Shown: positions 14,326 to 48,180 of the stretch, in pieces | Layout: the number at the start of each line of letters is the position of its first letter | Position numbering within the stretch: position 1 is the stretch's first letter | Source of the DNA: Styela clava | Lineage: Eukaryota | Assembly (NCBI RefSeq): GCF_964204865.1 | Contig: NC_135254.1 | Coordinates: 19,468,001-19,532,000 of the forward strand | Length of the DNA stretch: 64,000 nucleotides | Direction: 5' to 3' | Position numbers and translations under genes: made by a program | The notes under the pieces: model-generated | The model's input: only the letters and a program-made list of their open reading frames with translations | What the model was told of the DNA's origin: nothing | Databases searched by the model: none

Positions 14326-17038
14326 ATGAATATCAGAACATTGTTAGTGACTTTGATTGTGTCAGTAATTACGGTATCTGGGGATGAAACAGATACCAAG
14401 AAAGTGTGGTGTGTGGATGATACTGTGATGCAAAACACTGATCTTGTCAAAGGCATTGATAGAGATGATTTGTGCAAATCAAGTATAAGTAAGTGCTTCC
14501 CTTTTTATTGTATTGTTTCTTATGATGGAAGTGCATGTCATCTAAGGTAGCAGTTCCTTTACAGCGATTACAATCAATAGTACATTGTGATAATTTATAA
14601 CTAGTTTAATCCATAAGCAAAATATGTTTTGTAATAATGCTTATTTTTTTCAAAATGTGCTACCAATCACTGATCTCGGCTAAATGAATATAAATTAAGG
14701 ATAAGGCTAACCATGTATGTCATATATACTGTTAGTTTTACTCAACTTTTTTCATATGTTCAGTAAATGCCACACCATGGTCAGATGAGGAGGATAAAAC
14801 ACCAGCTAAACCAGAAAATCTCCAACTTCAAGCCCGCACTTATAAAACTGATGATGAAAACTCATCAAGGCAAATAGCTGTGTTTATATCATGGAGACAG
14901 AAAAGTAAGAAATTCTTTTCAGCCCTACTTTTATTTGTTTTCAAATTTACACTGGTCAGCCATTGTTTTGTCATTGAGTGGATGCTCTTTCAGTAAAGAT
15001 AAGTTCATTGCACTGTGACAAATTATCACTGTTGAGTTCAAAAATATGAATTTCCACAGTGGGTGACCTGCCTTCCTCACAAAGTTACTATGTTGAATTG
15101 AATTTTATCAATCCTCCTGGTCAACACAAGCAATATACAATGACATGGGATAATGCTCTGTTGAGGGAACTGGAGAATAGTACAGCACATTATGTAAGTT
15201 TTTTTAAAATTAAATATCAGGAATTAGTCTAGGGTTTCATATTTACCATGGGGAAAATAAAAGGCAGAGCAAACTGTAACTGATGATCAAAGGAAATTTT
15301 TGTATTTTAAAATTATAGGTGAAAAAATATATTTTTATACAAACAGGTTGAATTCAATTTTATCTACTGCAGCAGAATTGAAGGAAGCTACCATATTGGG
15401 CCCGGTGATAAATACCGGTTCAAGATACAAGGTTTACCCATGTATCAAGAAGACTCAGATCCCCAACTTGTCGCTGGGAATATAGCAATACCAGGTACAA
15501 AAAAATACGAAACTACACTTCCACAAGAAGTCCGTCAAACTTTTGATATTTAATTATTATTTACACTTTCAGGTTGTAGAAAAAGCAAGGAAATTCGAAG
15601 ATCTGCAGCTTGCCGCAGTCATACAAGAAGAAAGAAACGTCCAAAACCTAGTATTATTATTATTGTTTATTACTATTGATGAGAATGAAATCCTTTGAAT
15701 CAAAATAAATAAATGTACCGTACATAAAAAATAGAATAATGGACGATGGAAACTGATGCGTATCTGCAATACAATGCAAATCCATTAATTCTGATGATTT
15801 GTTTACAGTAAAGCCTATCAATGAACCAGCTGAAACTATCGATAAAGAAGAACAACCGTCTACTGAATCTGCAAAGAATATGAATGAAGCACAAAATCGC
15901 TCAGGTATTCAAAGAGTAGTGCTGGAAATAAATTCCTGATAAAGAAATTAATGTTTAATCGAAAAATAATTTACTTGCAGGAGATGATCCAGAAATAGCT
16001 GATTTTACCTCAACAAATATTGTTTTCATTATTGTTGGAGCGGTTATCATCGGCGTATTGATTATGGCATTATTATTCATTTTATGTCGTAAGAGGTTGC
16101 ATGGATGTAAGTTATTTTGTAATACTTCTAAGCCTTTTCATGTTTTGTGCATGACTCGCAAGTCACAATCACAACTTACCATATTTCTTATCTATTATTT
16201 AGATATTCTTCCGAAGAAAAGCGTCGCAAAACGACGTGTTCTAATAATCAGCAGTTTAGAAGAAAAATATTCGCAAGCTATTAACATGCTTTTAAAGATT
16301 TTTGACAAGATTGAAAGCATCAAACTAACATGTAATCTACGACAGAAAATTGACATAGGAGAGCATGGAATTGTAAAATGGGTGACAAAAAATGTTACTG
16401 ATGCTGATATTGTAGTTTTTGTCATAGGCAATAAAAGTGAAGTTGCAAAGGATCACTGTTCTGAAAACTCCCCATTAGAAGTAGAAGAAATTGAGAAACA
16501 TCAAGTTGGGCAATCACTCAATACAGCAGAAACCATCATCAATTCGAATAAGTGCGTAAATTCGCACAAAAAATTTATAGTACTCGACCTACATCATCAT
16601 GTTAAGAGGGAAGATTTGCCGATTTTCAAGCACTATAGATTGCTATCGGATTTCAAAAAATTCACCCATCATGTTATTGGAGCATCACATATCATGAGCA
16701 CTAGTGATAAGAAGATTTTCAGTAATCTACTCTCAAATGCACAGCTGGGATATGGAACAAAAATTACAACCGCGGAAATAGATGAAGATGACGTTATTGA
16801 TCCAAAAAATGCTCCCATTTCTGGCCAAAATAATTTTGATTCTCTACCATTCCCACCTGCAAATATTGAAGAAGGACAATCCCTGGCATTGAATATTGAT
16901 GATACTTCAGCATATGTTGATGGACCTCCATCGTGTGAAAGTAATCAGTCTCACGAGTATGTAACAACTGATTATAACAATCCAGGACAATCTTACAGAT
17001 ACCTCAAGGCAGGCGCTAGACCAAAAACAAAATGCTGA
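14326..17038 (+). CDS. IL-17 receptor-like gene A (signal peptide, single FnIII, stalk, TM, SEFIR, tail)
   Basis: Exons 14326-14488 (signal), 14764-14904 (PWSDEEDKTPAKPENLQLQ...IAVFISWRQK), 15060-15193, 15347-15494 (VEFNF...PGDKYRFKIQGLPMY...IAIP), 15573-15650 (GCRKSKEIRRSAAC), 15809-15904, 15981-16106 (TM IVFIIVGAVIIGVLIMALLFIL), 16203-17038 (RRVLIISS...IGEHGIVKW...ADIVVFV, SEFIR-like). Confidence 0.88.
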
Positions 17039-17656
17039 CATTGATAATAATACAACCAAGTCTATATAAAATGTTGGGCACTAGAATCTGACAAGGGCAT
17101 CCTTATATTTAAATGAGCTAGGAATGGAGTTGGATCTGAACGCTGGCAAAATGTCTCGCATATCATACCATTATGCAATAAACACACTTGAAAGCCATTG
17201 ATTTTTAAAATCATTTATTCAGCTTCCTATGATTTGTTCTTCCTATTGCCTGATACTGAACATTCGGTTACTTTACTTATTACTTGGGTTTATAATAATA
17301 TTTTCATGTGATTCTATGTACACTCTGCCACACGAATAATAGCTGATGCAGTTTTTATTTGTCTTTCTATGTATATTACCCTTATCAAAATAAACACCAT
17401 ATTGTTTTTTATTATTATGCTAAAGTGTGCAGAATATTTTCGTTAATGTCCATAGACAGCATCTTATTTTTGGGACATTTAAAACTACTGCTCACATTAT
17501 AAACTTTTGTGCAATTTTTTCTATGATATAGATCAGCTAAATGAATATCATGCGATGAATAAAGAGATCGAGATCCTAAAACCGCATTGCGAGCGCGGAA
17601 AGTTTTTATTAATAGGTACAAATTTTATTTCTCTGGGAATGACCATTACTATAGAC

Positions 17657-17836: not shown

Positions 17837-18175
17837 CCATATAACATCTGATGTTTTTAATATACGAATTTAACTCTGAAAAAAAAGGTGATTTTTATTC
17901 AAAAGTTTGCAGTTATACTCTGATCAATGTTATTTGCTATTCTTTTCTCCAGAATTGAAGTTATAAAAAATTTCTAACTTCCGTTATTAATGTTTTTTCT
18001 TATTATTGTATTCATATTCAGAAAAACTAGTTTGTGATTGTGATTAACTGAACTATAGTACCTATTGTGAAATGTTTGTTCCTTTTTGAGGTGTTATTTT
18101 GTTGTATTTGTGAGCCAAAAGTTTCAGAAACCTGATAATGATTTTTTTGTGTTTATATAGATTATATAGGATGTA

Positions 18176-21100
18176 ATGATAGCAAGTCTTATAAAATGCA
18201 TCCTGCTTTTACTGATGTTGCTGCTACCTTCTTCATTCTCTATGAATTGCATGTCGGGAAAAGGAAATATATGCACATGCAAACAAAGTATGTTGTTTTT
18301 ACATTTAAGTATGACAATTTGTTCACTGTTTCGAATGTATATATCCAGAGACAACATTTAAGTCCAATCATAAAAGTATTAGCCATGAATATCTTAATGG
18401 ACAGAATTCATTCAGCTGGGCGGCCTCGGAATTGACTTAAAAAACCAAGTTTGTTTTACTCAATATGGTTTGAGAAATGTGATACATGCTTAAAACTCAA
18501 GAATTTGCTGTTCATGTAACTTATTTTAAAGAGGGTGTGTCAAGATAAAAGGGTGATTGTATTGAAATTTTGAAAAAATCAAAAATAGTTTATGACATAA
18601 AAATTTACAGAACTCTTATATATTTAAACCTCGCCAAAATTCATGGTTGATTTGATATTAAAAAAGATGGTCGATAAATGAAGGTGTGTTATAGAAAAAC
18701 GCAGAAATAACAATGATTTATTTACAACAATATTTTGACTGATATTGGTAATTTATTATTACATTTTACAGGACGAGGAATACCGTGGTCAATACCGACA
18801 GATAGAACCGCTCCTGCTGTGAATAATGTCAACGCCCGATTTTTTGTTGAATCCGAGAGGATTGGCATTAAAGTAAAATGGAGCTATCGAGGTGAGGCCG
18901 TGTGTACGCTAATTTGTTTATTAAGGCCAAACAACGAATTCTATTTGATTTTCGTTTATGAAGTCGTAATGTTATTAAATAAAAACCGAGCCTTACTATA
19001 TTTGTAACTTATCTTAGGTATAATAAATTGGAGAACATTCAGGACATAGTAGCTCATTACAAAATTTCAGAAAGCCTCATAAATTATAAAATATTTATAT
19101 CATGGTAGTGGCCAAGATTTCAAATTAGCTCTCTGTCCTGGTTAAATAAAAGCTTGTTAATTTCCATATACAGTTATGTATTTGCCAGACATTTCTGGAG
19201 GATTTTTGATTGAAGTACTATATTCTAAAGGTGACCCAAAATATTATCACTGCAATGTGACAGTTCAAAGAACTAGATCAAAGAAACCCGCTGTAAGTAT
19301 GCTATTAGAATTTGGTTAAGTAATCAATTATTCTACCCAGCTATAGAAATTCGTATAATAAGATTATAATACATTTCAGATTACATTTCAATTCATATAT
19401 GGAACTGGTACTGTACGACCAAAGGATGAATTTCTGTTTAAAATATCATCACTTCCGCTCTATACTTTTGATAGCAAGCCATCTAGCGAATCAGTTACAT
19501 TACTTGTTAAAGGTTAGTATTCAGAAAAACATTAGGAATTGAAATTCTATATCATACTCGGTTCTGATGGCATTGTGAATATTACATAAGATCAAATAAA
19601 GCCTGAACTCATTGTATTTGATTTCCACAAACAATAGTTCTTCCGAGTATTGTGGAAATGACCATGTTTTTGATTCTATTCTGAAATGAACTAATTCAAA
19701 AATTGAGATCAGTTAGATTATGATCAATGACAAGTACAAACTTAAACTAGCATCCCTAGTTTACTCAACACTGTAGGTTCCACATGCTACAGACAATGAT
19801 TTTTTTTCCGCATACGGCCAGAAAACTGCATCTCATTCGGTGTAATACTAACTAACACATTATTACGCATATATATATCTAACAGGTTGCAAACACAAAG
19901 ATATATCACGAACTATATACTGTAAAAGAGACAGAAAAAAAGTTTCTATCAGGATAGATGAGAACCCAGTACATGGTGAGCTGGCATTGAATTGTCTTTC
20001 TTGGTAACACTAATTGTTATTTGATATGGAGGGTATAGGCTCAATGCACTGAGGCCGACTAGAAATGAAATTTTGAAATACCAATAACATATTTATATTC
20101 AATATAGGCTATACTGTATTTCTGTTAGAATTTGAGCATTGACTTTTTTCAGATCAAACAATCTTTGATCAAAGAATCTTTGTTACCCTTTTTGTGTTGT
20201 GTGCGATCCTCATCACTCTACTGATATTTTATTTTCTGGCCATCATATGCATATGCAACAAACCAGGTGGGTTCGGTTAATTGACACTAACTTTAGAGAT
20301 GGCAAGCCTCTTGATTTTGCTGCTTTTTGGTATTGAAAACAAATTTACCAATGACTTTGTAAGTGTCATCTGAAAAGCTATTTGACAAACTACATAGTTT
20401 CTGTGTCATAACTTCTATTTACTCAATATGCCAATATTTGTGTTCTGGTCAAAAATATAATTAAGAAGATTCAATTTAGCTGACAGTAAAATTTGCATTA
20501 TTTTTTTCCAGGATTTCCTACTCTGACTCGTGTTAATCCTAGAACAATATTAATTGTTGGCAATGTTGACAATGAAGGAAAAATATTATTGACTAACGGA
20601 CTTTATAACGTTTTACGTTCAAATGGAGGAAATAATGTATACACCATCTCCAATGTTCAAAATATGAATGCAATTGGACAAGAAGGAATAACTGTTTGGT
20701 TGTCTAAAAAAATGTCGACATCAGATGTTTGTATCTTCCTGACTGACAATGATCTGACAAATGACAATAGTCATGTCAATATCGCAATTGGTTTAGCAAA
20801 GAGCATGATATTAAAAAAACACCATATCAGAGCCACGCGCAAAAAGATCATTCTTGCTCACTGGAACAACACTATCCACCATGACAATATTGAAAATCTA
20901 GTATTTTGCCAACATTACCATCTCATAACAGACATCAAAAAACTATTGAAACATGCTCTCGGAGAGCATTTTTATTGCACGCCTCAAAATTGTGACGATT
21001 CAAAGGAATTATTATGCAGATTATTATCTACTTTACCCCAATCAGAGTCTATAATCAGTAATGTCGCTAATATTAACGACCTCAGTAATACAGATGTCAT

Positions 21101-21176
21101 TGAAATCTGTGAAGAAGAAGAAACAATGAATATACTAAACCTAGATGAATTACCATCTATTGAATGCAACACATGA
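18176..21176 (+). CDS. IL-17 receptor-like gene B
   Basis: Exons 18176-18287 (signal + CMSGKGNICTC), 18772-18891 (PWSIPTDRTAPAV...IGIKVKWSYR), 19174-19292, 19380-19512 (ITFQF...KISSLPLY), 19886-19975 (GCKHKDISRTIYC), 20153-20266 (TM), 20512-21176 (RTILIVG...IGQEGITVWL...SDVCIFL, SEFIR-like). Confidence 0.87.
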
Positions 21177-21639: not shown

Positions 21640-24600
21640 ATGCAGAACTATGGGTTAGCTTTATGTTTGTTTCTGATATTACTTGTTTGCTGGAGTAAAG
21701 TGGTTGATGGTAAACATATTGAATGCAGGCGAAAGAAGTCAGAAAATTCAAAGTATTTAAATAAAAGAAAATGTTACTGTTATAATGGTAATAATTTTGT
21801 ACGAATCTAATACTACTTGATATCAGGGCTGTGGAGTTGAAGAAAATTTGCGCTAATCTCGATTCCAACTACAATAACTGCAAAAGTTGTTTATTGGAAA
21901 TGCTTGGTCAATTCAAATTCTGAATCATGACTACAATATCAATAAAAATATGCAAAACTAAGACACCAATTTCACAGCCTTAGGTAATATTCTTTAGATT
22001 ATATCTGCACGTTCACGATCAAGATATTCTCTTTAAAGATAGAACAATGGCTTTTTGAAATTAATATGTTGGAACTAGGTGGGTACGAACTTGGATTCTC
22101 AACCAAGAAACAACGTGCCCTGTTGATACATTGTTGCGTCACAATAACCTTTCAATTTTGTCATTCTCTTGAAATTTTAGAATGTCCACTACTGAAGGGC
22201 TTTTGCTTGTAAACAGTACTCGCCCCTCACTTGAATTCCGGGAGAATTCTTGCTAACATACAGAACCAGCAAATCCCATAGCGCGCTGATGCTGCTTAAT
22301 TTGAAAATGTCAAGCAAGATAATAAGATATTCGTTCGCTGAGGGAAATATTATTTTGACCAGTAGAATTGCCATTATTGCCGATTATTCAAACTCTAAAT
22401 ATCATGCACAATCTATTAATAGTTTTTTTTATACATAGTTACAGGTCCTGGGTGGAGTAAGAAAGAAGTTAAACCAGCCCCAGCAGTTTACAATCTTTCA
22501 CTAGTTCAGACTGCCTATAATATCTCAAAGGGTGAAACTCGAATTGGTGTTGATATTACTTGGACACAAAAGAGTAAGTTTATGTCAACACCCATAGCCA
22601 AGTATTCAAGCCAAATACTTATGTATTTTGAAATAAATTACGAACAACCTACTAAATTGATATATTTTGCATCAAATAAAGCAAAATCTAGAACAAAATG
22701 CTTTTCTTTGAGGGTCACTGATCCATTCGTTTGACTTTTATAATCATTATGTTAAATTTTTCCTCTCTGCAATTGAATGTAAATAAAATAAAATGTTTTT
22801 GTATTGTTAGCTTTTAATTTTTTGATATTACAGGTTCTGATATTGAATATATAGACCCAGGATACTTCATTGAAGTTGTAGACAGAAGCAGCAATGAGGA
22901 TTGGCAATATAAATGTCCTATAAAAGTTAACAATTCAAAAACCGAAATGGTAAGAAATGTGCCTTATTATTAGTGATACAGGATTACAGGGTAACCCTCA
23001 AAAAACACAACCGATAATTAATTCCTTCTATGAACATGAAAAAAATATATTCGGAACTTCTGCTTGTGTATGATTGTACCCAAAAAAATATGTGGATGGA
23101 ACTTAAATATTCAAAATAAAGAAATGTAAATATCCCCAAACTAAGGCGGGCAGAATCAAATCTAACAAATATTTTTATTGTTGCTTAGTTTCACGCCCCC
23201 TCAAAAAATTGTCTACGCCTCCACCGTTAGAGAACCGCTATACTAGAATATGACCAAATAACCTGGGTTCTGTTTTGGTTGGTCATCCGGTATCTGTCTT
23301 ACACATACCAAAGTTTACACTAAAACGCAATGATATCTAAAAAGAGCAGTCCTTTTTTTGTGCGAAATTGTTTTATGAAACGGAATTGCTCATAGATAAA
23401 TATACTAGCATAAAATGGTTAAACCTACCGGTATGTGGAAATCACACTATGACTTAATCTTCTGTCATTAACAAGCGTTTAATATCTCAGCTATGACCCT
23501 AATTCTTGAAAATTGCTTATATTTTTTAGGTGACGTTTCGCTACACTTTTAAAACTATTCAACACCGTGATGAAATAGTACCAGGAAAAACTTTCTACAT
23601 AAAAATATTTGGACTTCCAATGTACAATAAAGATGACACGCCATCATCTGTTAAAGGCGAAATAAAAATACAAAGTACGCTAACGCTTGAAAGAGACTAT
23701 GATTTCTAATTTTGGTATATATTTTAAAGCATGAAATACAAAAAGCATGGGTGTTTTTTTTTAATCTGCCTCCAGTATGCCAGAAACGATATTACCCACA
23801 AATAACTTTTCCATTGTTTAAACCAATGATTCTGTAGATTATATTTAAACTACGCAGCAGATGCTTTCAGCAATAATAACCAGTGAGAGTTTCACCTTAC
23901 CACATAGATGTATGATCATTTTGCTTATTATTTACTACAGAATGTGGAAATACTCAATCCCGTATTCGTGATAAGAAGAAAAAAAATGACCAAAAAAACA
24001 AGCGAATAAAAGGTTAGCTTAATTTTCAATAAATAATATTTACCGTATATAGTCTCCCACTTCTTAAATGACTTAATATTATTTTTTAGGTTCAAATTTG
24101 CGCCCAAGGGATGAAAATAATGTAAAGAATAAAAATAAAGGTATATAAAGAAAAATATTATATTAGCTGAAACCGATTGTTATTTGAATTTATTCTTCAG
24201 AGATATCGTACCATTCGAAAATACAATACTTGTTTTTTAGTAACTCAACTTAATTTTCAGTTCAAAACAAATAGCCTGCTTCTGCCTAAATTATTTTTAT
24301 TTTTTTAGATTCAAATTTACGCCCAAAGACTCCATCCAAAATAAAGAATAATAAAGGTATAGTGATGTCCTATTTACTAAAACAGAACGAAATTGATTGT
24401 TATCTGAATTAATTTTATTACAGATAACGTTCCATTCGAACATACAATACTAGTTGCTGTATTCGCCACCGTAGCAGTGATCTCAGTTATTGCCATCATT
24501 GTTTATAAAACTTCACAAAGTAAGTGGGATCTATTTCTGAATAATACCATTATGCGTATCTAAATTGCTACTTAATATGGTAAAGTGTGTGAAAACAGAG

Positions 24601-25748
24601 GTTCAGGAGCACCGTGAAAACTAGTGTCAATGCGTTATTGCTGCAAACAGATAAATATATATCAACCTGATATCGTGGTACTTAAGCTCTGAACAAGGCC
24701 CTATATAAGCAACCACTGATATATCATGACACGTAAGAGGTTACTTTACTTTTCAGTTAAGAAATGTCTACCCAATTTATTACACTCTGGGTAAGATGAA
24801 GAGCAAGAAATTTTAACCAAGATTTGTAAACTGCAATACTAAATTTTTAACCGGTACTACGCTAGTGATTCTCATTTGGATGTTTATGTTCCATCCACTT
24901 ATTTTCAACATGATTTTTGAATAAAACATACTTTCGCCTCATTAGCTTACTAGTTGGTGAGGCGCGAGAACCACTGTGCTAGGCCATCGCTCCACGCGAT
25001 TTGTGTAAAAATGATAATATTCTGGAAATTCCTTACAGGGGAAAGAGAGAAACTACCAAAAGAAGTTCGACATATTTTAGTAATCGGAGATTACATTGAA
25101 AGATACACACCGGTGATCAATCGATTAATTGAAATTTTCAGAGAAGATAACGTTGAAATTCATTCAAATATACGACAAGTTTCAGAAGTGGGACAAAATG
25201 GTATCATAACATGGACGACAGAAGCACTGGAAAAAGTGGATGTTGCAATATTTGTTGTAAACAGCTTGTCACAACTTAGAAACGAAGATGTAACAGTAAT
25301 TGAACAAAACGGAAAAGATCAATACTCTCCTGTTAAAATAGCTATTAGAATCGCAGAAAACATTGCACTGAAAAAAGGTTTCAAAAACTCCAGAAAGAAA
25401 TTCATAGTTGTAGATTTGAACAAATGCATCGTCGAAAATCCCTTAGTAATGTGTGAAGTTTACAACCTGGAAAAAGACTTCAAAAGAATGCTGAAACATG
25501 CACTCGGACCTAATTATAAGGATGAAAATATAAAGCAAAAGAAAGAGACGTTAGCTAAGTTAATTTCCGCAAGTCGAAAACCAAGATCAACCAGACCAAA
25601 AGAAAGATCTCTTCAACCGGTGATTGATTTTGAAAAGTCAAACAATCTTGATGAATCCATTCCACACGAGTGTGAACAAATACCACTGAATTCTTTAAAT
25701 ATACAACAAGATCAGCCACCGTCTGTAGAATGTAACGTATGTAGGTAG
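21640..25748 (+). CDS. IL-17 receptor-like gene C
   Basis: Exons 21640-21709 (MQNYGLALCLFLILLVCWSKVVD, signal), 22445-22573 (GWSKKEVKPAPAV...IGVDITWTQK), 22834-22949, 23530-23674 (VTFRY...PGKTFYIKIFGLPMY), 23941-24012, 24090-24140, 24309-24356, 24424-24519 (TM), 25039-25748 (RHILVIG...VGQNGIITW...VDVAIFV). Confidence 0.85.
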
Positions 25749-26965: not shown

Positions 26966-29005
26966 TGCGACTCTATAATATTATTCAGATCAGATGGGGA
27001 AAGAAAATATATAACTTTTAGTTTCATATTACTTTATGACTGGTTGGTTACCGTACAAGTTATTTTTTCTTATGTACAGATATATGTGAAACTGAACACC
27101 TTATATGTAACAAATTTGAGGGAATTGCCATAAGGAAAAAGAATGATAATTTTTTGACCAAGTTTCGATTCCACGTCTGAGCTATCACATCAGGAAGCTA
27201 AATTATTTGCATATACAAACAGAGCGTCATCAACAATCTCTCATATTCCATTAAGCAACCAATTGAGTAGATAATTAATCAAGGTTTGAATATTTCGGAA
27301 AAGCTGTATTGCACAAATCAGTGGTTCCCAACCTTTTTCGATAAATTTTGGAACCATTATTCCTTTCTTACTGGGCATGTCATACAATCTTCAATAAGGG
27401 ATCATTGCCTAATAATAGGTGCAACCTACAGTTTGAATAGTTCACGCTTCCATAAATATGTATCACAATAATACTTTATCACAATAATACTTTATAACTA
27501 AACATAATTTGTGGAACCACCCTACATACAGAATGACATTTCCTCCCTAGGAAGGAAAACGTTGCATAAAGTATAAACAGATATAGTTTCAATACTAACA
27601 TTAGATGAAACAACAATAAATTCAGGAGGGAAGTTAGCATATATATCAAATTGATGTACAATGCACATCTGTTGAGATAAAAGCATAAATGTATGAAATT
27701 AACGAATGACTAGAAAATATATAATACAAATAAAAATCCAATTACTCAAATGTCTGTATGAAAACCAAACAATAATACATGGTACTTTACTTCCTATATG
27801 TGTCTGAATTTGCATACAAGTTGAGCAAACTTTTGTCTATTCTAGTAAACAGTTTCGGAAGATTTTATGAAATGAAAAACGAGAGAAAAATGAAAATTGA
27901 TCCCATAAATTTAAATAGCAAAATTATGACCTCCGTAAGACTCCATAATGGTTTGAAAAACGCAAATGCTAATTTATCACAACAAAGATTTAGTAAAGTG
28001 ATCCATAGATCCACTTTGCGTCGAAAAGTGAAATGTTATATTTTCAAAACAAACAGTTTTATACATAAGGTTTCAATACTCGTCATTGTCTGGTCAGTTG
28101 AATATAAACCAATTGTGACACTGAATTTTAAATAAGGTAGTAAGTCATTTTGAAATCAAGACTAGTCAATCATCGAAAACAGTATAGGTGTATAATGGTG
28201 GTATTCTTAAAATTTATTCAAACATCATAAAACGAAAAATTTATATTTGAAAAACATTATAAAGCTTGATATTTTATTTACAAAATGGTTATCTGAAGCA
28301 AAGCAAAATTCGTTTTCCTGCAAAACATCTCTATACGAAAATACATATAATATGAAGATAATTATTTTCGATAGATAAAACAATAGATCCTCATGAATGA
28401 TGAATCGTATGGCACATGAATGGCACTTTCGACAAAGGCTAAGAAAAATATTATCATAATCAGAGGTGGAGAAGGGTGGGTGGAAGAGTGGGAGGAAACA
28501 GGACGCAATCAATATCGACAAACACAAACAGCTCAATTGTTTTCTCCTCGAGACTGACAGCTCAGTAGAGATTCATCGACTAATTATTATACGGGTATAA
28601 GTAGATTAAGGAGTGTAGAAAATTAGGAAACAGGAAATCTCAATTCACTTGATTCTAGTATATCCATTATGTGTTTGGGCATATATATGCGAGACGTTCA
28701 AAACATGGTTTATGATGGATGAGAAGTAATCAAGTAGCAAGTCTCAATTCTTGAAATCAATGCATGCGCTTGATAGAAACCATTCTCTAGATCACATATC
28801 AGAATACCTAATAATTTCAAGTTTCGGTTAGCTTTTCTGGTATCAAATTGTATCTAAAACGTTGCAAGTTACATTGGTTCAAGTAGATTCCCTGCCATGT
28901 TCCATCAAGTGAATGCGTAAGTGCGGAGGCTCGGTTTCTCAGAGAGCATGTGATTAGATAGATATATTTCATATCAGAGACTAGTTTTTATTTTGGATAT
29001 AAGCA

Positions 29006-32000
29006 ATGAAGTTGTTGAAAAAGAAAAGATTGATATATATAGTATTTATAAGCCTAATCGCAAGTTTTTGTGATGCGTACATAACCTGTAGCGAAGAGAT
29101 TGGTGAACTGTGCAAGAAGAAAGATGTACATAACGGTAAGTCTGTGTTGTAGCTGAAAGATGCTCGTTAATATAGAAAACCCTCTAATTGTAGTTGGAAT
29201 TTCTCAGCATTCCGTCTTTTATATCATGGTGGTAAAATGTTTATTAGAAAAGGTCTGACCATGATTGGGAAAAAATGTTATGTGGACTTTTATATATGAT
29301 GCAAACTTTGTTTTCCTTCAAACAGTATCTAAAGGAAGCTTAACACATACTCAATACGCTTAATTGTAATGTTTTTATGTCACTTTAAAAAATAATTTGT
29401 TCCATCTGAGTAACGTATATTATATAGTGGGTCACCAACTTTTGGCGGTTACAATAAATGCATATTGAACCATGATAATGAATTCTGTCATCTGTCATTT
29501 TCAAATTTCAATCATGCAGCTACAGCTTCCGCAACCTGTCTCCTCTGCAGGTTATTAATGGCAAAACAACAAGCATGTTCTTGAAGCATACCAATTACGG
29601 TACATCACCAATCTTCTGGTTTATATTGATTATGTTGTTTCTATACTTTCAACAGATGAAATACCATACAGTAAAGTTGGAGAAATGACAGCACCAACTC
29701 CAGAATGCATGACTGTAACCTTACTTGATCAAAATGGCTCAGAACATTTGACAAAAATAACTTGGATGCAAAAGTGTATGTATCCAACTTTTATATGTAT
29801 GTGTAAACTATTGTCATTCAATGAACCCCGTCCTTAACGGTTTTTATGAAGTTTGCTAATTTCAGAAAAGTCGAAATTTTAGAAAATTTTCAGAAGACCA
29901 CTAAGAACCCTTTAATTAATACAAAGTTAAAATTCAAGATTGCGATGGTTGCGATTTCAATGGTACACTTTCACATAATTCGGAAATTAAAATATTTTTG
30001 ATATTTCATTTGTAATGTTTGACTTTGACTATAATCAAAATATATGTACAGGGAATGACTTGCAGTATGTTGATGGATACTATATGTCGATACTTAACAG
30101 TGCTTTTATGGATTTTACAACCGCTCAATACCTTTTTCAAATCAATAAAACCGAACTAGAAAAATATAAAGATGAGAGTGGATACGTGAGTGAAATTTTG
30201 AGACATTGCTACGATATAAAGGAGAATACTATGAGAAAAAAAAACATAGCAATATAAAAATATACAATAATGAGCAGGTTATTGTTATTTTTTATAGAAG
30301 TTGCTCATAAAAAATATCAAAGCACCACATTTATTTTTGTATAGACAATTTTATGATGCTATCGTTATGACAGATGCAAAGGCACTTGTTTCCTCTATCT
30401 TTAAACCTCAGTAAAAAATAAATTGATTTTAATAATTATAATCTTTGTTCAATATTAAATGGTACGTCTGAAAATTTCAGCATTTTGTTTGAACCATCTA
30501 TTCCAGATATTTTTGCAAATATTCTGTCCAACTTATGTCACAGGGTTCCCCATTATTAGATAGTTTCAATCAAAATCTGTAATATATATTATTGTGTAAT
30601 TTACTTTTTGGTTACCCCTTTCTTCTAATTGATATATATTAGGTTACATTCAGTTTCAATGACCACAAAGAACTGTCAGGAAAAATTGCCATCATTATCT
30701 CATCAATGCCAATGTATCAAACTGATGATAATGACCATTTTCTTAAAGTTAATATGGATGGTTAGTTTATTTATTTAATTCACTTTATTGTATATAAAGA
30801 TGAATAAATATTTTTTAAGTAATTTATAATTATACAATTAGCCATTTATAAGCAACTCATAACAGAGTTGTATTCACTCATATTAAAACAATAAGCTCAA
30901 TCTATCATTAAATTATAAAGATAACTTATATATAAGAATTGCTATTTATATTTCTCTTTGAACAACTTGACAAGCGCAAATTATGCATGAAAAGAAATAT
31001 AAACATTTTACATCATTGTTTTATTTCTCACTAATCCTTGCAAATTAAACACAAAATTCCAATGAACATTTTGGAATTTGCATCACCATACATGCCGCCA
31101 TTATCAATTATAGTTTTACTGATAAACCTTTATGTTTTGATCGTTTTTCAGCCATTTATTCAGATCCATATATCACAAAGACAGAAACTATTTGTTTAAA
31201 CAACCAAACAGGTAAAGAATTAATTCTAAAAATATTGATGCCAATTCATGAATATCTCACATTTTCATTTTCAAAAGTAACTTGATAAATGTTTAAATAT
31301 TATCACAACTTTTATATCAGATAACAGTGAAGCCATAAACACTCATATGAAACATAGATATGAAATTGCACAGAGTGCCCTGATGCGATAGTTAAAGCCC
31401 ATTGTTGCTACAGATAATGAAGGATCAGAATATGGAAGTGAAATGCTCGGTATAGATTCTCAAGAATATGATATTGGTAGCAGCGAAAATTTCCCAACTG
31501 ATCCTGATGACGTAGAAGTGTCAAGAGATTCACCACTTTGTGACACTACTGGAAGTGAGTGATATTTAAAACAAGGTTGTAATAATTTAACGAGTCAGTT
31601 ATTGACTTATTCCCAACTCAAATCACTTGGTAGAGTGACTTGGAAGGAATTTTTCTCCACTCATATTGTTTTTTCGAATAACCTCTGACATCAAGTTAAT
31701 AACTTGAGATAATGATAACACCTAACACTAAGATCGCAACAGTACAAATAGTGAAACGGCCGAAGATTGTAAAATTGTAAAGATGTATAGTTTCACTACA
31801 TTGGGTATTGTAATAATCAAAAGTGAATAATGCAAAAAAACATGTATCGAATTTCAAATATGAACAGTAGTGTAGAAACATGATTTATTGCCATATATCA
31901 TTTCAAGCCTAATAATTTTACTGCTTTTTTACAGCATTAATTAAGATTATTGAATCTCTCTGTTTTGCAGTGGTACCTGTAAGTGTTACAATAATAGCAT

Positions 32001-33412
32001 GTGTTATATCTGCACTGATGACTGTGTTTACCATAATCGCAGCTATAGCATTGTACTACGTCATCTGCAGAGCCATAGGTAAGAATATAAAGCTAATTAG
32101 ATTATAAGAATAGATATAAAATCTATTCTTCTTCAAACTAAATTTTTAGCAGTAAATTTCCTGAAATATTTATCGCACTTTCAATTTTGTTTCAAAACAA
32201 GAAAATATGAATATTTACTAAAAAAAAAAGACAAAAATGTTTCCTATCAAAACATAATGTTAACATTGCAGAGAAAGAACACAAAAGAAGAAAGAAAGAA
32301 ATGTCAAATAGAGGGCGAATAAAGAAGCAAGGTCAGTGGCTAATGTTAGAATCATAACATGTATCGGGCTTGTTCGAAGCAAAAGGGGTGAAAAAAGAGT
32401 AATATAAAAAATGCATAATATAAACTAATATCCAGGCTTCAATATCACTATCAATTTGTAAGACAATACTTTACTTTCTATTGCGACAGAATCAAAAATA
32501 AAGTCCAAGGTGATGATTATCGCCAACATGATGGATGCTGAAGAACAAGTAAAGGATGAAATATACAAAAAAGCTGCATTGTGTCTTGCAAATATATTAT
32601 ACGAAAGTGGAGAATTCGAAGTTGGTTGCAATCTATGGGTAATGAAAGACATTGCACAAATGGGAATAGCAATGTGGACACACAATATAATCACATCTCA
32701 AGACAAAATAGTCTTGGTGTGCAATCCCCACACAGTTGCTGCATTGAAGAAATATTGCCCTAATGAAGGTGTCAGCCAGAATAAAAGTCTCGTTCACAAC
32801 CCCAATTCCTCCGCTCAGATCATTTATAGGATACTAATGAGCACCCACACTCTTGAGAAAAAACTAGTCATTGTTTGTCTAAATGATGAGGAGCATGACT
32901 GCTTAGCAAACCTGATGCTACCTACTTTGAATCATTGCGAAAGATATGACCTCGTTCATCAATTTGCAGGTTTAATACAAGCATTATATAAGAATCCCAA
33001 TGATGCAAAGCGTATGAAAGCAGAAATAATGGCAACTATGCAGAAAAGTTTATCCCACATATTCCTTGCAAATAAAAATCAAGACGAAATTGATAAAAAG
33101 GTTGGAAATGACTTTGATAGATTGAAATCTTCAATACAAGAGCAAATGTGGCTGATGAATGAGAACAAACCGGCACAGAAACTACCAGATAAAAAATTCC
33201 CTCATAAAAACAACAATCCTGCGGCAACAACAGAAAAAATCATTCCTGATATGCAATTTGATTCAATGTTTTCTTCACGATGCAACAGTCACAGCACAGA
33301 AACTATTTCAAGCTGTGGGGATACGGGATTCCAGGAGACCAATCACATGCATTACCAATCACATTACCATCCCGCTGGAGCCAGACCCAGGACTTATTCA
33401 AATAAACTCTAG
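29006..33412 (+). CDS. IL-17 receptor-like gene D (most canonical SEFIR of the array)
   Basis: Exons 29006-29135 (signal), 29656-29775 (TAPTPECM...KITWMQK), 30052-30186 (DLQYVDGYYMSIL), 30643-30760 (VTFSF...ISSMPMY), 31152-31211, 31414-31554 (acidic stalk), 31971-32078 (TM), 32272-32331, 32490-33412 (KVMII...AALCLANIL...EVGCNLW...IAQMGIAMW...DKIVLVCNP; compare the IL17RA SEFIR pattern KVWIIYS...EVALDL...ISEAGVMTW...KIIVLCS). Confidence 0.88.
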
Positions 33413-35021: not shown

Positions 35022-35116
35022 ACTTTTAGGAACAATGTGTCTAAGCGTGTGATTGTGTAAATGCTTGGATTAAAAATACAAAAATTGTAAACTTCTTTAC
35101 TTTTAAACTTTAGATA

Positions 35117-38100
35117 ATGCTATCAATATGGTTAGCGTATAGCATCATTTTCTACTCAGGAATAACAAGAGCTCAAAATTGTAAGAATCAGCAAAGCTGT
35201 TTGTGTAGAAAGCAGCAAAACTGTTTGTGCGATGATTATCAGGAAGTAGCTTGCAGTTCTGAATGTTTGAAAGAAGGTACAGTGGGTTATCTTCAAGATG
35301 GCCGTGCTTTTACTTGTTCTGTCCATGGTGCAAATAGAGGTAAGAATAATTTTAACTTTTTAGAAACTTTAGAGTAAGATAATTTTTATGATTTAAAAAG
35401 ACAAAAATGTTTGATTCATTACTGGTACTTTATTTTGAGAAATTTTCTACCAAAATACTATGCCATATGTATCAAAAGGGCTAAGATAATTTTTATGATT
35501 TAAAAAGACAAAAATGTTTGATTCATTACTGGTACTTTATTTTGAGAAATTTTTAACCAAAATACTATGCCATATGTATCAAAAGGGGTGCGTGCATACC
35601 ACACATTTGTGTTTAGGCCAGTATGCTCTTATGCATGCATCAAGTCTTTAACATTATTGTCAGCTTATTTATCTATTTTGCTAGCATTAAGGGACGAATA
35701 AATGTATATACATTACCATGAAAATTAGGTAATAATCAACAATATTACTATAATAATATATTTGTAGACTCTTGCAATAAGTTATAACTTGCCAAAGGAT
35801 CCAATTATATGAAAACGGATGATTTTTTTTGTAATATTTGTATTAACTAATCATATACAAAAGTGTATGGTTACCAATACATAAAAAACTACCAACTATG
35901 GGCTTGTAGTTTTACAAAAAAAATTATGCATTTCTGAAAGAATAAATTATTCACTCGAGATCTAAAGCTATTCATTTAGGATAGCGTTAAAAATGAAACT
36001 TTGTATGACATAAAAATTATTTGAAATCACAGACATACCTCGACCAACAAAAAATGACACAACAGCTTGTATGCCAGTTTCATTCAGAATCAGTTGCCAC
36101 AAAACTTTCATAAGAAGTATTTACGTACCAACACTGAATATGTCATGGGACCAAGAAGGTATGTACCATAGTAATAAATAGTTCCGTATTTCAATAAGTT
36201 TTACATTTTATTAGTGAAAAAGTAAACATCAGTTCAATTGATGCAGACTCTGAAATGAAAATTTTATTCAAAAGTAGGTCGTGATTGATGACTGATATAC
36301 CAAGAGCAAAAATGACATCATAGAATACATGATGGTGAAAAAAACAGAACCCAGGTCATTTGGAACATATTCTAGATAAAAACATAAATTTTGTGCAGAA
36401 AATCATAGATTACTGAAACTTTTGCATACAATCATACACAAACATAAATTCAACTGTTGAAGTGGTAAATTTGATAATTATTTCATAATAAAATTTCAAG
36501 TAATTAAGATTAAGAAATTCATTAGTTCTTTTTGGGTTATCGTGTATCGGTAGAGGCTGTCATCGAATAGAGATTGATGCTAGACTAGAAGCAATTAATG
36601 TTAACAGTATGTATATACCAAATTGATATCCATCTGCATACTTTACTTATGAGAGGAACATAACATTGTAAATATCATTGTAATGATAGATAGATGTTTT
36701 GCAATTTAGAAACTTGAATAAATGTAATTACTGGTGAAAAATTTGCATCCTTCGTTTTAACTTTTCAATTGGATTAGCTCAATACCATTAACTATTTTTT
36801 GCAAGTTCGTAGACTAAAAATAAGCCAATTAAGAATTCCCATGTCCATATCTATCGGTATATATTATTAGCCTTTACTACATTTATAAAAAAAACTATTA
36901 TATTTTAAATTATAAGAATACAAAAAATGAATTTGAAATTTTTTTGATATTATAACAGAAAGATTCATTCGAGATGGTGATATCACTGGCTTTTATCTTG
37001 TTGAAGGAAACCTGCGTTATAAAGTATCTATTGATATCAAAAATGACAAAAGAAATCATTCTATGCATGTGGTAAGTAATTACAATTAAGATAAAACAGC
37101 TTTAACTTCACTATAAAAATACTGTTATCATATGGGAACTTTAATCGAGGACAAGCTAATAGAACAAGCCTCATCATGGGATAAATGTTATTAAGCCTAA
37201 TGCAGAAAATTCGCGCATAATATTTGGCTTCGAAGCAAGATAAGCATAAGATAAGATTTTCATATTTATCCCGGAAAAGAAGAAGACCAACGGTGAAGCA
37301 TACCCCAGCCTCACACCCAGTTGCCAGTCCAAGTTGGGTATGGAATTAGTTAGCCAGTTATTTGTTTTAGATGTATGTACTTGATGATGAAGGAAGCCAT
37401 AACTGCCAAGTTGTCACATGAACCTACCTACAGTGGCCAGGAGCCCATCAATCCTCCCACACATAATTATCCCACATAGAATTTGAACTTGCGAACCCAC
37501 GTAGAAGAATCAGAGGTGCAAAGGAAGGCATATTCCTAGCACTTAGCATGATGCGCCAACTGACAAGGTCAGGATAAGATTTTCAAAATGATCTTAGAGG
37601 AGAGAAAAGGTCTGGTAAGGAACAGGCCAGCCTAATGGAAGTCAATTCTACATTACTAAATAATCTCAAATTGGTTTCGAGCCCATGAGGATACATCACA
37701 CAGTAATTCTTATTTTTTCACTATACTATAAATCAATCTCTGAAACATCTGTAATCTCATAGCATATCCACAATTTTTCAGCCAAATAATAGCTGCATAC
37801 GATTTCGATATGATTGTTTTGGAGCACATAACGATCTACTTGAACCAGAAGAAAAAATGCAATTTTGGGTTGCATCATTACCAATGTCACAACCAGACGA
37901 CCCAAGAAATGGTCTTTGTGCCGAGTTTACTATTCCTAACCAGGATGAATGTATGTTATTATATTTTTAATAATAAGATATTCTGTGGGCATATTGGTCA
38001 CGTGATTATTTAACACTATATATGTATAGTGCGTAGCTTTTTAAAAATCTCTGGTCCAAGCACGATGCCAATAAGCCCAGGGTGGAGTAGATCCGGTCTG

Positions 38101-47700: not shown

Positions 47701-48180
47701 TTGGATGAAATACATTCAATGATTGCGCGACTGAGGCATGAGTTCAATTTACAAATAGCAAGTAACTGGGAAAACAGAGTAATAATTGGTAAAGATTGGA
47801 TGGATTGGTATCAACAAGCCATGAGCAATTCCAATACTATTCTGTTTATAGTAAGCTATAAAATTTTTTGCGATAGTCTTACTTTGACTAAAACATTGCA
47901 TTCCGGGCAAGAAATCAAACAGGCATTCAATCAAGCACATTCTTGCAAGATACAAGGAAGAGCAGAAGTTATCATTCTTCTTACTGGTAAAGTGAACAGA
48001 ATTCGGATGTTGTTAGCGAGACAAAAAACACATTATGTAGTATACAGCATGCAGAACCACTACAAAGATTTTTTGCTGCATATGACGGGCAAAACAGCAT
48101 CAAAAGACAAAATAAAATATTTGATGAGTGCTATTAAAAACTGTGATCAAAGGAATGAAGAAGCAGACACATTAGTATAA
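41790..48180 (+). CDS. IL-17 receptor-like gene F (short cytoplasmic tail)
   Basis: Exons 41790-41943 (signal), 42337-42461 (PWPKDEDKTA...IALDITWSQK), 44334-44451 (NIEGYYL), 44837-44984 (VNFGYQC...PGDYIEVKLHSLPMY...ITIP), 45203-45280, 45639-45695, 46079-46120, 46638-46748 (TM), 47654-48180 (RRILVIAD...IASNWEN...SNTILFIVS). Confidence 0.85.
43392..44077. mobile_element. pogo/Tigger-like non-autonomous element in gene F intron 2
   Basis: Imperfect TIRs CCATATATTCTCATATATAAGCCGA / TCAGATTATATGCAAGAATATACGG followed by TA; subterminal TATAAGCCGA repeats. Confidence 0.65.

What the first reader, a model, noticed from the sequence alone, without database searches (positions are those of the whole stretch)
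14764..16106. Single-FnIII ectodomain: the IL17R D2 domain is missing from all eight paralogs
Seen (example gene A): after the D1 exons and the short GC..C linker exon only low-complexity stalk exons precede the TM exon. The introns in A, B and C leave no room for a ~100-aa second domain. Known: IL17RA/RB/RD have tandem FnIII D1+D2, and both contact the IL-17 dimer. As I recall, the 1-0-1-1 phase pattern matches the D1 exons of IL17RA. Inference: an atypical half-ectodomain receptor class that may bind ligand differently, act as co-receptor or decoy, or recognise non-IL-17 ligands.
Basis: partly seen in the sequence, partly recalled or inferred. Interest (0 to 1): 0.8.

Follow-up and report, generated by a model that had tools for sequence, protein, structure and literature searches.

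The report
One-domain IL-17 receptors in sea squirts
Eight neighbouring sea-squirt (Styela clava) genes encode relatives of the IL-17 immune receptor whose outer part keeps only the first of the usual two ligand-binding domains; other sea squirts share this trimmed design, and I found no paper that describes it.

Summary
Coordinates 14764-16106 run exactly from exon 2 to the end of the transmembrane (TM) exon of gene A. Gene A is Styela clava LOC120344275, 573 aa.

- **Gene A layout:** signal peptide, Cys hairpin, one IL-17RA-like FnIII domain (D1), a disulfide "GC..C" linker, about 45 aa of disordered stalk, TM, SEFIR.
- **No room for D2 in A:** the introns after D1 are 78, 158, 76 and 96 nt.
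- **Transcripts:** spliced contigs from four runs (three studies) join these exons with nothing between them. The same holds for gene B.
- **Annotation:** RefSeq models of C and F agree.
- **Weaker cases:** D, E, G and H show the same collinear layout only ab initio.
- **Homology:** a family profile aligns to human IL-17RA residues 17-167 (D1 plus linker, E=5e-7) and stops where D2 starts.
- **Structure:** AlphaFold models of gene A and of a Phallusia homologue show one FnIII domain. The gene A model superposes on IL-17RA 7-169 (Z 14.7).
- **Distribution:** the family is ascidian-wide (Ciona, Phallusia, Styela), and all members are annotated "uncharacterized".
- **Not the usual invertebrate form:** sea-urchin, shrimp and arthropod IL-17Rs have long or D1+D2 ectodomains.

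The most likely reading is a signalling IL-17-type receptor that binds ligand through D1 alone, after secondary loss of D2. Function is untested. I class it as a new variant of a known kind.

The parts
14326..14488 (+). Gene A exon 1: start codon, signal peptide, N-terminal two-Cys beta-hairpin
   Evidence: P0001 aa 1-54. AF2 strands 24-31 and 49-55. C29 and C50 are nearly invariant in the family.
14764..14904 (+). Gene A exon 2: first third of the IL-17RA-like FnIII D1 ('PWS..TAP' and 'ISW' motifs)
   Evidence: This exon alone hits Pfam PF16556 positions 15-42. Family profile positions 44-96.
15060..15193 (+). Gene A exon 3: middle of D1, including the hypervariable stretch that aligns with the IL-17RA CC' ligand loop
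   Evidence: Highest column entropy in D1 at aa 116-127.
15347..15494 (+). Gene A exon 4: last third of D1 ('LPMY', '..IPG'), phase-1 donor
   Evidence: Pfam PF16556 positions 105-139. The E3|E4 and E4|E5 joints are seen in transcript contigs.
15573..15650 (+). Gene A exon 5: 'GC..C' linker followed by a polybasic tract (RRKKRPKP). It is homologous to the disulfide-bridged helical D1-D2 linker of IL-17RA.
   Evidence: The profile alignment 'iPgCrknkeiskttaCkde' pairs with IL-17RA 'VPDC-EHARMKVTTPCMSS'. AF2 helix 201-216. Joints.
15809..15904 (+). Gene A exon 6: acidic low-complexity stalk, occupying the place where D2 would be
   Evidence: AF2 pLDDT is below 50 over aa 221-263. Present in the transcripts.
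15981..16106 (+). Gene A exon 7: end of the stalk plus the transmembrane helix
   Evidence: AF2 helix 264-293. Joints 15904|15981 and 16106|16203.
16203..17038 (+). Gene A exon 8: SEFIR domain, disordered tail ending in GARPKTKC, stop codon
   Evidence: Pfam SEFIR 29.5 bits against a cut-off of 23. VIA Z 14.1 to the IL-17RA SEFIR domain, PDB 4nux.
18170..21176 (+). Gene B (LOC120344279). Exons: E1 18170-18287, D1 exons 18772-18891, 19174-19292 and 19380-19512, GC..C linker 19886-19975, TM 20153-20266, SEFIR 20512-21176.
   Evidence: All joints are seen in transcript contigs of 3-4 runs. Sequence checked. Profile hits.
21640..25748 (+). Gene C (LOC120344277). E1 21640-21786, D1 exons about 22426-23679, basic stalk exons, TM exon about 24411-24524, SEFIR 24987-25748.
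   Evidence: RefSeq isoform X2, P0004, mapped by tblastn. Profile hits.
29003..33412 (+). Gene D (ab initio). D1 exons about 29652-30760, candidate acidic stalk exon 31414-31554, TM exon 31971-32078, SEFIR 32489-33412.
   Evidence: Collinear profile hits. Phase-1 exon candidates. SEFIR ORF. No transcript or annotation evidence.
35114..40609 (+). Gene E (ab initio). Last D1 exon about 37785-37940, Thr-rich stalk exon 38306-38428, TM exon 39281-39373, SEFIR 39869-40609. Exons 2-3 were not located.
   Evidence: No transcript or annotation evidence.
41790..48180 (+). Gene F (LOC120344280). E1 41790-41948, D1 exons 42336-44983, C..C linker exon 45196-45285, TM exon 46637-46771, SEFIR 47650-48180.
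   Evidence: RefSeq-derived P0008 mapped by tblastn. Profile hits.
49943..57643 (+). Gene G (ab initio). D1 exons about 51769-54087, GC..C linker 54445-54492, TM exon 56302-56418, SEFIR 56993-57643.
   Evidence: No transcript or annotation evidence.
59450..63195 (+). Gene H (ab initio). D1 exons about 60636-62024, Thr-rich stalk plus TM exon 63028-63195. Its SEFIR exon lies just past the window end, at what would be window 64101-64664.
   Evidence: The SEFIR exon was found in the downstream extension L004 1101-1664.

Best explanation
**What it is.** Gene A and its seven tandem neighbours encode type I membrane receptors of an ascidian-specific branch of the IL-17 receptor family.

**Shown.**
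- The proteins are homologous to IL-17RA/RB from the N-terminal Cys hairpin through FnIII domain D1 and the disulfide-bridged helical D1-D2 linker.
- Exactly where IL-17RA's hinge and D2 begin, they continue instead with a 20-70-residue low-complexity stalk (basic, acidic or Thr-rich).
- A single TM helix and a cytoplasmic SEFIR domain follow.

**Inferred.**
- D2 was lost secondarily, before the Ciona/Phallusia and Styela lineages split. The retained linker is a vestige of the two-domain ancestor.
- These are signalling-competent receptors for the ascidian IL-17-like cytokines.
- They would grip the cytokine dimer with D1 alone. D1 carries ligand sites 1 and 2 and, in vertebrate IL-17Rs, also the D1-D1 'tip-to-tip' receptor-receptor interface.
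- They lack site 3 and the D2 elbow that lets one IL-17RA adapt to many ligands.
- They would signal through SEFIR-Act1/CIKS.
- The tandem expansion, and the extreme divergence concentrated in the CC'-loop region, would supply ligand specificity by gene number instead of by hinge flexibility.
For: **Architecture**
- The exon model of A equals RefSeq P0001 exon by exon.
- Spliced contigs from 4 runs in 3 studies join D1, linker, stalk, TM and SEFIR with introns of 78, 158, 76 and 96 nt and nothing else. The same holds for gene B.
- Pfam on P0001: IL17R_fnIII_D1 27.5 bits (cut-off 26) at aa 58-201, SEFIR 27.6 bits (cut-off 23), no D2.
- Other members also hit D1 (P0007 31.1 bits, over the cut-off; P0011 22.9 and P0015 19.2, under it). 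None hits D2.

**Homology**
- The 15-sequence family profile matches IL-17RA chains at E=5e-7, profile 39-196 to IL-17RA 17-167. The match ends at '..TPCMSS', the second linker Cys and the hinge Met.
- PMC9637376 gives D1 as 2-172 and D2 as 173-273, places the linker disulfide at Cys185-Cys196 and starts the joint at Met197.

**Structure**
- AF2 of P0001: N-terminal hairpin, 7 strands over 72-193, helix 201-216, disorder 221-263, TM 264-293, SEFIR.
- The Phallusia homologue gives the same picture.
- Foldseek's top hits are IL-17RA ectodomains at E=1e-9, covering about 165 of about 270 residues.
- VIA: model 32-213 on IL-17RA 7-169, Z 14.4-14.7, rmsd 2.7 A. SEFIR Z 14.1 to 4nux.

**Distribution**
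- Only 16 proteins in 1.84 billion reach E<=1e-3. The named ones are Ciona intestinalis LOC100179646 and LOC100177305, Phallusia mammillata and Styela clava. All full-length members have the same layout.
- There is a second Styela locus on C1.

**Function (inferred)**
- In IL-25/IL-17RB, sites 1 and 2 (499 and 636 A2) lie in D1. Site 3 (760 A2) is made by the linker and D2. The tip-to-tip contacts are D1-D1 (PMC9477748).
- The family's most variable D1 segment aligns with the IL-17RA CC' loop.
- Act1-like SEFIR hits exist in the genome.
Against: - No ligand-binding, localisation or signalling data exist for any member.
- D, E, G and H rest on ab initio models only. Their D1-to-TM intervals are 1.0-2.2 kb, so small unrecognised exons cannot be formally excluded.
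- Loss of site 3 would remove up to about 40% of the interface seen in IL-25/IL-17RB, so affinity for an IL-17-type ligand is not guaranteed.
- Several paralogs score below the Pfam SEFIR cut-off (B 13.4, C 20.2 and F 14.8 bits), so signalling competence may differ among copies.
- 'Secondary loss' is argued from parsimony and the vestigial linker. The family tree is an unresolved star.
- Whether ascidians also keep a two-domain IL-17RA-like receptor is unresolved (the C4:15.1 Mb cluster).
Confidence: 0.72

Rival explanations
1. Co-receptor or decoy. The D1-only proteins do not bind cytokine productively themselves. Instead they dock by D1-D1 tip-to-tip contacts onto a ligand-binding multi-domain receptor (for example the 794-aa IL-17RD/ILCR1-like gene), or they soak up ligand or receptor as dampers. 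Some forms may be shed or secreted.
For: - In the IL-25 complex, IL-17RA contacts only IL-17RB, through the D1 tips, and never touches the ligand (PMC9477748).
- A multi-domain SEFIR receptor exists in the same genome.
- A 234-aa homologue, P0007, ends after the linker without TM or SEFIR.
- A polybasic RRKKR tract follows the linker in A.
- RefSeq predicts a TM-less isoform of B.
Against: - SEFIR is retained in all eight genes, which a pure decoy would not need.
- The transcripts of A and B that were seen include the TM exon.
- The CC'-loop equivalent is the most variable part of D1. That pattern suits direct ligand contact better than a conserved receptor-receptor interface.
Confidence: 0.2
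2. The receptors have been retargeted to non-IL-17 ligands, such as other cystine-knot factors or microbial or self-recognition molecules. D1 then serves as a fast-evolving recognition module on a SEFIR signalling chassis.
For: - Extreme divergence: 20-27% identity between neighbours and terminal branches of 1.3-2 substitutions per site.
- Tandem expansion.
- Arthropod IL-17Rs bind neurohormones (CFSH, PTTH) according to PMC11087794.
Against: - The D1 fold, the N-terminal hairpin Cys pair and the linker are conserved with IL-17RA.
- According to earlier notes of this scan, which I did not check, Styela also has a large IL-17-like ligand expansion. That would offer matching partners.
Confidence: 0.12
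3. Annotation or assembly artefact. A D2 exists but is encoded by unrecognised exons or alternative isoforms, or D1-only is simply the ordinary, poorly detected invertebrate state ('degenerated double-FN3').
For: - Pfam's D2 model is weak on divergent sequences, and exon-wise searches are insensitive. The D1 model, for instance, missed every window exon in the genome scan.
- D-H have long introns.
- PMC11087794 classes about half of the IL-17Rs in each subphylum (amphioxus excepted) as 'degenerated'.
Against: - In A and B the spliced transcripts and the intron sizes leave no room.
- The ectodomain between the linker Cys and the TM is about 25-60 residues and is predicted disordered in two species.
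- Lengths, not only domain hits, differ from other invertebrate IL-17Rs: sea urchin 535 and 662 aa, shrimp 295 aa (PMC5457136, PMC10604874).
- Arthropod clusters do show D1 plus D2 by Pfam.
Confidence: 0.04

Closest known systems
Human IL-17RA (PDB 4hsa, 3jvf, 7uwm, 5n9b)
   Same: - Type I receptor.
- N-terminal Cys-bearing extension.
- Non-canonical FnIII D1.
- Disulfide-bridged helical linker, 'PDC...C'.
- SEFIR domain.
- Profile E=5e-7 over residues 17-167. Z 14.7 over residues 7-169, and Z 14.1 for SEFIR.
   Different: - IL-17RA continues after the linker hinge with FnIII D2 (residues 173-273). D2 forms ligand site 3 and swings by 19-30 degrees to fit different cytokines (PMC9637376).
- The ascidian proteins have a disordered stalk there.
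- IL-17RA is a single shared gene. Here there are 8 (+ at least 2) hyper-diverged copies.
- The C-terminal SEFEX/CBAD-type extension was not examined.
Human IL-17RB (PDB 7uwj, 7uwk, 7uwl; SEFIR 3vbc)
   Same: - D1 fold: Z 11-12 over model residues 47-216.
- SEFIR: profile E=7e-6, Z 13.1.
- Ligand sites 1 and 2 and the tip-to-tip contacts are in D1 (PMC9477748).
   Different: IL-17RB has D2. Site 3 (760 A2) uses the linker plus D2, and that part is missing here.
'Degenerated double-FN3' IL-17Rs of invertebrates (PMC11087794)
   Same: Highly divergent IL-17R ectodomains that conserved-domain models barely detect. That paper's survey covers tunicates for the ligand and adaptor types; I could not check whether these receptor genes are in its data set.
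   Different: That category assumes two diverged FN3 domains. Here the second domain is physically absent, as shown by length, exons, transcripts and structure models. The paper text mentions no single-FN3 class.
Ciona intestinalis LOC100179646 and LOC100177305, and the Phallusia mammillata homologue (all 'uncharacterized' or 'SEFIR domain-containing')
   Same: Same family and same layout: signal peptide, Cys hairpin, D1, 'PxC..C' linker, acidic stalk, TM, SEFIR.
   Different: 21-22% identity to gene A. The Ciona genes are a pair, whereas Styela has an eight-gene array plus a second locus.
Styela clava intronless 794-aa SEFIR receptor at G000:C4:9.07 Mb (IL-17RD/ILCR1-like)
   Same: Same genome. 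SEFIR 45 bits. Weak D1, fn3 and IL17R_D_N hits.
   Different: An ectodomain of about 440 aa with several domains, including Ig_ILCR1. Intronless. It was not picked up by the family profile.

Membership tests
IL-17 receptor family (SEFIR-domain type I receptors) | Signal peptide and a single transmembrane helix (type I topology) | tested here: met
   N-terminal hydrophobic leader and TM segment in the sequence. AF2 helices 2-18 and 264-293.
IL-17 receptor family (SEFIR-domain type I receptors) | Cytoplasmic SEFIR domain | tested here: met
   - Pfam PF08357 29.5 and 27.6 bits against a cut-off of 23 for gene A.
- Profile E=4e-6 to 7e-6 to IL-17RB and IL-17RA SEFIR.
- Z 14.1 to 4nux and 13.1 to 3vbc.
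- B, C and F fall below the Pfam cut-off but align in the family profile.
IL-17 receptor family (SEFIR-domain type I receptors) | IL-17R-type FnIII domain D1 | tested here: met
   PF16556 27.5 bits against a cut-off of 26, aa 58-201. Profile to IL-17RA 17-167, E=5e-7. Z 14.7 and rmsd 2.7 A over 158 residues.
Canonical 'double-FN3' IL-17R (IL-17RA/RB type) | Second FnIII domain D2 between the linker and the membrane | tested here: not met
   - No PF16578 hit in the protein or anywhere in the window.
- Only about 45 disordered residues lie between the linker helix and the TM.
- No exon for it in the transcripts.
- Structural and profile alignments stop at IL-17RA residues 167-169.
Canonical 'double-FN3' IL-17R (IL-17RA/RB type) | Disulfide-bridged helical D1-D2 linker | tested here: met
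   C197 and C209 of P0001 align with the two linker cysteines of IL-17RA. AF2 helix 201-216. The motif is conserved in A, B, F, G and in the Ciona and Phallusia members. It is unclear or decayed in C, D, E and H.
IL-17 receptor family (functional definition) | Binds an IL-17-fold cystine-knot cytokine | not testable with these tools
   No binding data. Multimer modelling with ligands was not run.
IL-17 receptor family (functional definition) | Recruits Act1/CIKS through SEFIR-SEFIR contact | not testable with these tools
   The only relevant result is that the genome holds Act1-like SEFIR hits at C5:17.29 Mb.
IL17RA orthology by gene structure | Intron phases of the D1 exons equal those of vertebrate IL17RA | not tested
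   Phases here are 1,1,0,1,1,1,1. No vertebrate gene structure was consulted.

The most novel reading that the evidence does not exclude
Ascidians replaced the vertebrate solution, one shared two-domain IL-17RA whose D2 elbow adapts to many cytokines, with an expanded and fast-evolving array of one-domain receptors, each matched to part of a similarly expanded IL-17-like ligand set. D1 plus the rigid linker would then be a naturally occurring minimal IL-17 recognition-and-assembly module, sufficient for ligand binding, tip-to-tip pairing and SEFIR signalling.
Probability: 0.3. Interest if true: 0.7.

Novelty: new variant of a known kind. Interest (0 to 1): 0.55.

Why it matters
- **A natural deletion experiment.** Structural work on IL-17RA, IL-17RB and IL-17RC treats the D1-linker-D2 unit as the cytokine-binding module. 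Here the closest invertebrate relatives of vertebrates have kept D1, the linker and SEFIR for hundreds of millions of years without D2.
- **A minimal module, if they bind.** If these receptors bind IL-17-type ligands, D1 (sites 1 and 2, plus tip-to-tip contacts) would be shown to be the sufficient core. That is useful for thinking about minimal decoys and about how receptor sharing evolved.
- **A correction to evolutionary surveys.** Such genes are currently lumped as 'degenerated double-FN3'.
- **An entry point into tunicate cytokines.** The family gives a concrete, expressed gene set (A and B are transcribed) for studying tunicate cytokine signalling.

Tried and rejected
  - The Atlas could not take P0001. 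I used Ciona P0023 instead.
- **Annotated proteins for D, E, G, H.**
  - Two alignment-seeded word searches returned only A, F and one unnamed 290-aa SEFIR fragment, P0002. The second of these also aimed at the C4:15.1 Mb cluster.
  - Those models therefore stay ab initio.
- **Exon-wise Pfam scans.**
  - The D2 scan of the genome and the scan of candidate exons of the C4 cluster found nothing.
  - Their power is low. The D1 model also missed the window's D1 exons genome-wide.
- **Family tree.** An ML tree was an unresolved star apart from the two Ciona genes. The order of duplications and a rooted statement about D2 loss cannot be given.
- **Repeats.** Within-window repeats do not explain the longer introns of D-H.
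- **Literature gaps.**
  - The supplement of PMC11087794 is not held, so I could not check whether these genes are in its data set.
  - The published Ciona 'Il17r' (AY261862, PMC6707023) could not be matched to this family. Its primer translations do not occur in the Ciona proteins fetched, so the link stays open.
- Exons were searched one by one. Whole-protein work used the RefSeq protein that the search returned, which matches my model exon by exon.
Full report
**What is at the coordinates.**
- The window is an AT-rich animal sequence (32% G+C).
- A word search with the open frame across the TM exon and last exon returned a 573-aa NCBI protein, 'uncharacterized protein LOC120344275 [Styela clava]' (P0001).
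- My exon model of gene A is: E1 14326-14488, E2 14764-14904, E3 15060-15193, E4 15347-15494, E5 15573-15650, E6 15809-15904, E7 15981-16106, E8 16203-17038.
- Every border is AG/GT. Each exon's peptide lies in P0001 at consecutive positions, with one split-codon residue between exons.
- The finding's 14764-16106 is therefore exon 2 through the TM exon.
- Intron phases are 1,1,0,1,1,1,1.
Exons were scanned singly, and whole-protein analyses used P0001 as returned by the tool.

**Is a second domain hidden?**
- The introns after the last D1 exon are 78, 158, 76 and 96 nt.
- Contigs of four public runs from three studies carry GT..AG joints at exactly 15494|15573, 15650|15809, 15904|15981 and 16106|16203. 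They also carry the E3|E4 joint as a loose end.
- The spliced joints show that these contigs come from RNA. In the 2506-nt contig of run X1 the record positions account for E4 to E8 with no spare bases.
- Gene B shows the same chain: 18170-18287 | 18772-18891 | 19174-19292 | 19380-19512 | 19886-19975 (GC..C linker) | 20153-20266 (TM) | 20512 onward (SEFIR).
- RefSeq models for C (P0004, LOC120344277) and F (P0008, LOC120344280) have D1, short basic or linker exons, TM and SEFIR.
- For D, E, G and H I found no annotated protein.
- A family HMM finds their D1, TM and SEFIR exons in collinear order.
- Between D1 and TM, the phase-compatible exon candidates are short linker, acidic or Thr-rich pieces.
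- H's SEFIR exon lies about 100 nt past the window end.

**What the ectodomain is.**
- Pfam on P0001 gives IL17R_fnIII_D1 (27.5 bits, cut-off 26, aa 58-201) and SEFIR (27.6 bits, cut-off 23). It gives nothing for D2. Exons 2 and 4 alone hit collinear parts of the D1 model.
- A profile of 15 family members matches IL-17RA chains of the PDB at E=5e-7.
  - Profile positions 39-196 align to IL-17RA residues 17-167.
  - The match runs through 'VPDC-EHARMKVTTPCMSS' and ends there.
- According to PMC9637376 that segment is the first, disulfide-rigidified part of the 18-residue D1-D2 linker. The joint begins at the Met after the second Cys. D1 is residues 2-172 and D2 is 173-273 in 4hsa.
- AlphaFold2 of P0001 with the family alignment has mean pLDDT 64, and mostly 75-90 per ten-residue block in D1. 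It shows:
  - a two-strand N-terminal hairpin;
  - seven strands over 72-193;
  - a helix at 201-216;
  - disorder over 221-263;
  - a TM helix at 264-293;
  - a SEFIR fold and a disordered tail.
- The Phallusia homologue P0011 gives the same picture.
- Foldseek's best PDB hits are IL-17RA ectodomains (E=1e-9, about 165-171 columns of about 270), then IL-17RB and IL-17RC.
- VIA-align places model 32-213 on IL-17RA 7-169 (Z 14.4-14.7, rmsd 2.7 A, 158 residues) and the SEFIR part on 4nux (Z 14.1).
- No part of the model aligns to D2.

**The family.**
- phmmer of P0001 against 1.84 billion representatives finds only 16 proteins at E<=1e-3.
- Those with names are Ciona intestinalis LOC100179646 and LOC100177305, a Phallusia mammillata protein, and Styela clava genes. 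All are 'uncharacterized' or 'SEFIR domain-containing'.
- The alignment shows one conserved plan:
  - a Cys pair in the N-terminal hairpin;
  - the motifs 'PWS..TAP', 'ITW.Q', 'GY..V', 'V.FN', 'LP.Y' and 'IPGC....EI....C';
  - then a variable stalk, TM and SEFIR.
- In the Styela genome the profile hits only this C5 cluster and a second locus on C1 with the same layout.
- Identities between members are 21-27%. The ML tree is a star with terminal branches of 1.3-2 substitutions per site.
- Column entropy within D1 is lowest in the strand cores and in 'LPMY' and 'IPGC'. It is highest at aa 116-127, which aligns with the CC' loop of IL-17RA.

**Is D1-only ordinary?**
- The literature I could read says no.
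- PMC11087794 defines IL-17Rs from cnidarians onward by a double-FN3. It calls poorly detected ones 'degenerated', with no single-FN3 class.
- Sea-urchin IL17R ectodomains are 535 and 662 aa (PMC5457136). A shrimp IL-17R has 295 aa outside the membrane (PMC10604874).
- ESM-Atlas neighbours of the Ciona member include arthropod clusters carrying both D1 and D2 Pfam domains (a lead only).
- The same Styela genome keeps a multi-domain, intronless 794-aa IL-17RD/ILCR1-like receptor.
- A further SEFIR cluster at C4:15.1 Mb has D1-like exons, the same '..IPG|' phase-1 junction and a GC..C exon. I could not decide whether it has D2.

**How it probably works (inference).**
- In IL-25/IL-17RB, ligand sites 1 and 2 (499 and 636 A2) lie in D1. 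[quoted passage not shown] Receptor-receptor 'tip-to-tip' contacts are D1-D1 (PMC9477748).
- In IL-17RA, D2 pairs with the cytokine's C-terminal tail and swings on the linker hinge to fit different cytokines. IL-17RA dimerises through D1 (PMC9637376).
- A D1-linker receptor therefore keeps the main binding pocket elements and the assembly interface. It loses site 3 and the adaptive elbow.
- I think it most likely that these are signalling receptors for ascidian IL-17-like cytokines that bind through D1 only. Specificity would be supplied by many diverged copies rather than by one flexible shared chain.
- The retained but, in some paralogs, decaying linker argues that D2 was lost rather than never present.
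- The co-receptor or decoy reading and the non-IL-17-ligand reading remain open.

**Verdict.** It extends beyond this cluster to ascidians generally. Function is untested.

Noticed in passing
window 15620-15650 (gene A exon 5); also gene B about 19925-19945 and gene C about 23930-24000: A polybasic tract directly follows the linker's second Cys: A has 'HTRRKKRPKP', B 'KRDRKK', C 'DKKKKNDQKNKR', and P0015 'DRKRKRKKKKKR'. It could be a proprotein-convertase site that would release soluble D1, or a glycosaminoglycan-binding patch.
   Followed up: no
P0007 and P0019 (Logan contigs of an unnamed organism, 234-235 aa): These family members consist of signal peptide, D1, linker and a short acidic tail, with no TM or SEFIR. 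P0007 is the best Pfam D1 hit of the family (31.1 bits). They may be naturally secreted D1-only forms, or they may be partial transcripts.
   Followed up: partly
window 19886-20512 (gene B): RefSeq isoform X3 of LOC120344279 (P0009) reads from the linker exon straight into the SEFIR exon and skips the TM exon 20153-20266. All transcript contigs laid here include the TM exon.
   Followed up: partly
window 17015-17038, 33380-33412, 40580-40609, 57610-57643: A conserved C-terminal 'GARP[KR]' motif closes the disordered tails of A, D, E and G. It also closes the homologues P0002, P0003 and P0005. F, B and C lack it. Its role is unknown.
   Followed up: no
G000:C1:14564300-14575133 (-), locus L006: A second locus of the same family holds at least two SEFIR exons. 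One gene there has D1 exons, a TM exon and a SEFIR exon in the same order, with 2.6 kb between the last D1 exon and the TM exon.
   Followed up: partly
G000:C4:15104000-15140000, loci L007-L009: This is another SEFIR receptor cluster. It has D1-like exons (L008 3531-5116, ending '..NIPG|gt' in phase 1), a 36-aa 'C..C' exon (L008 6066-6173), a TM exon (about 7485-7606) and a SEFIR domain split over several exons. Whether it keeps D2 is unresolved. It is not detected by the window family's profile at E<=1e-3.
   Followed up: partly
G000:C4:9073819-9076203 (-), locus L003 1319-3703: An intronless 794-aa SEFIR receptor with an ectodomain of about 440 aa. Pfam gives Ig_ILCR1 at 39 bits and weak fn3, IL17R_D_N and D1 hits. 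This is the genome's multi-domain IL-17RD/ILCR1-like receptor.
   Followed up: partly
window 17268-17740 (3'UTR of gene A): Transcript contigs of run X2 differ from the window by several indels (5, 3, 2, 4 and 14 nt deleted; 14 and 11 nt inserted) and a run of substitutions. This looks like strong allelic polymorphism in the 3'UTR. Coding differences between the RefSeq proteins and the window (92-100% identity in C) point the same way.
   Followed up: no
window 13062-13367 (-): A 101-aa minus-strand ORF just upstream of gene A, reading '..RRLSIRGLANVVGSSPEQVYEL..'. It looks like an exon of an unrelated neighbouring gene. I did not examine it.
   Followed up: no
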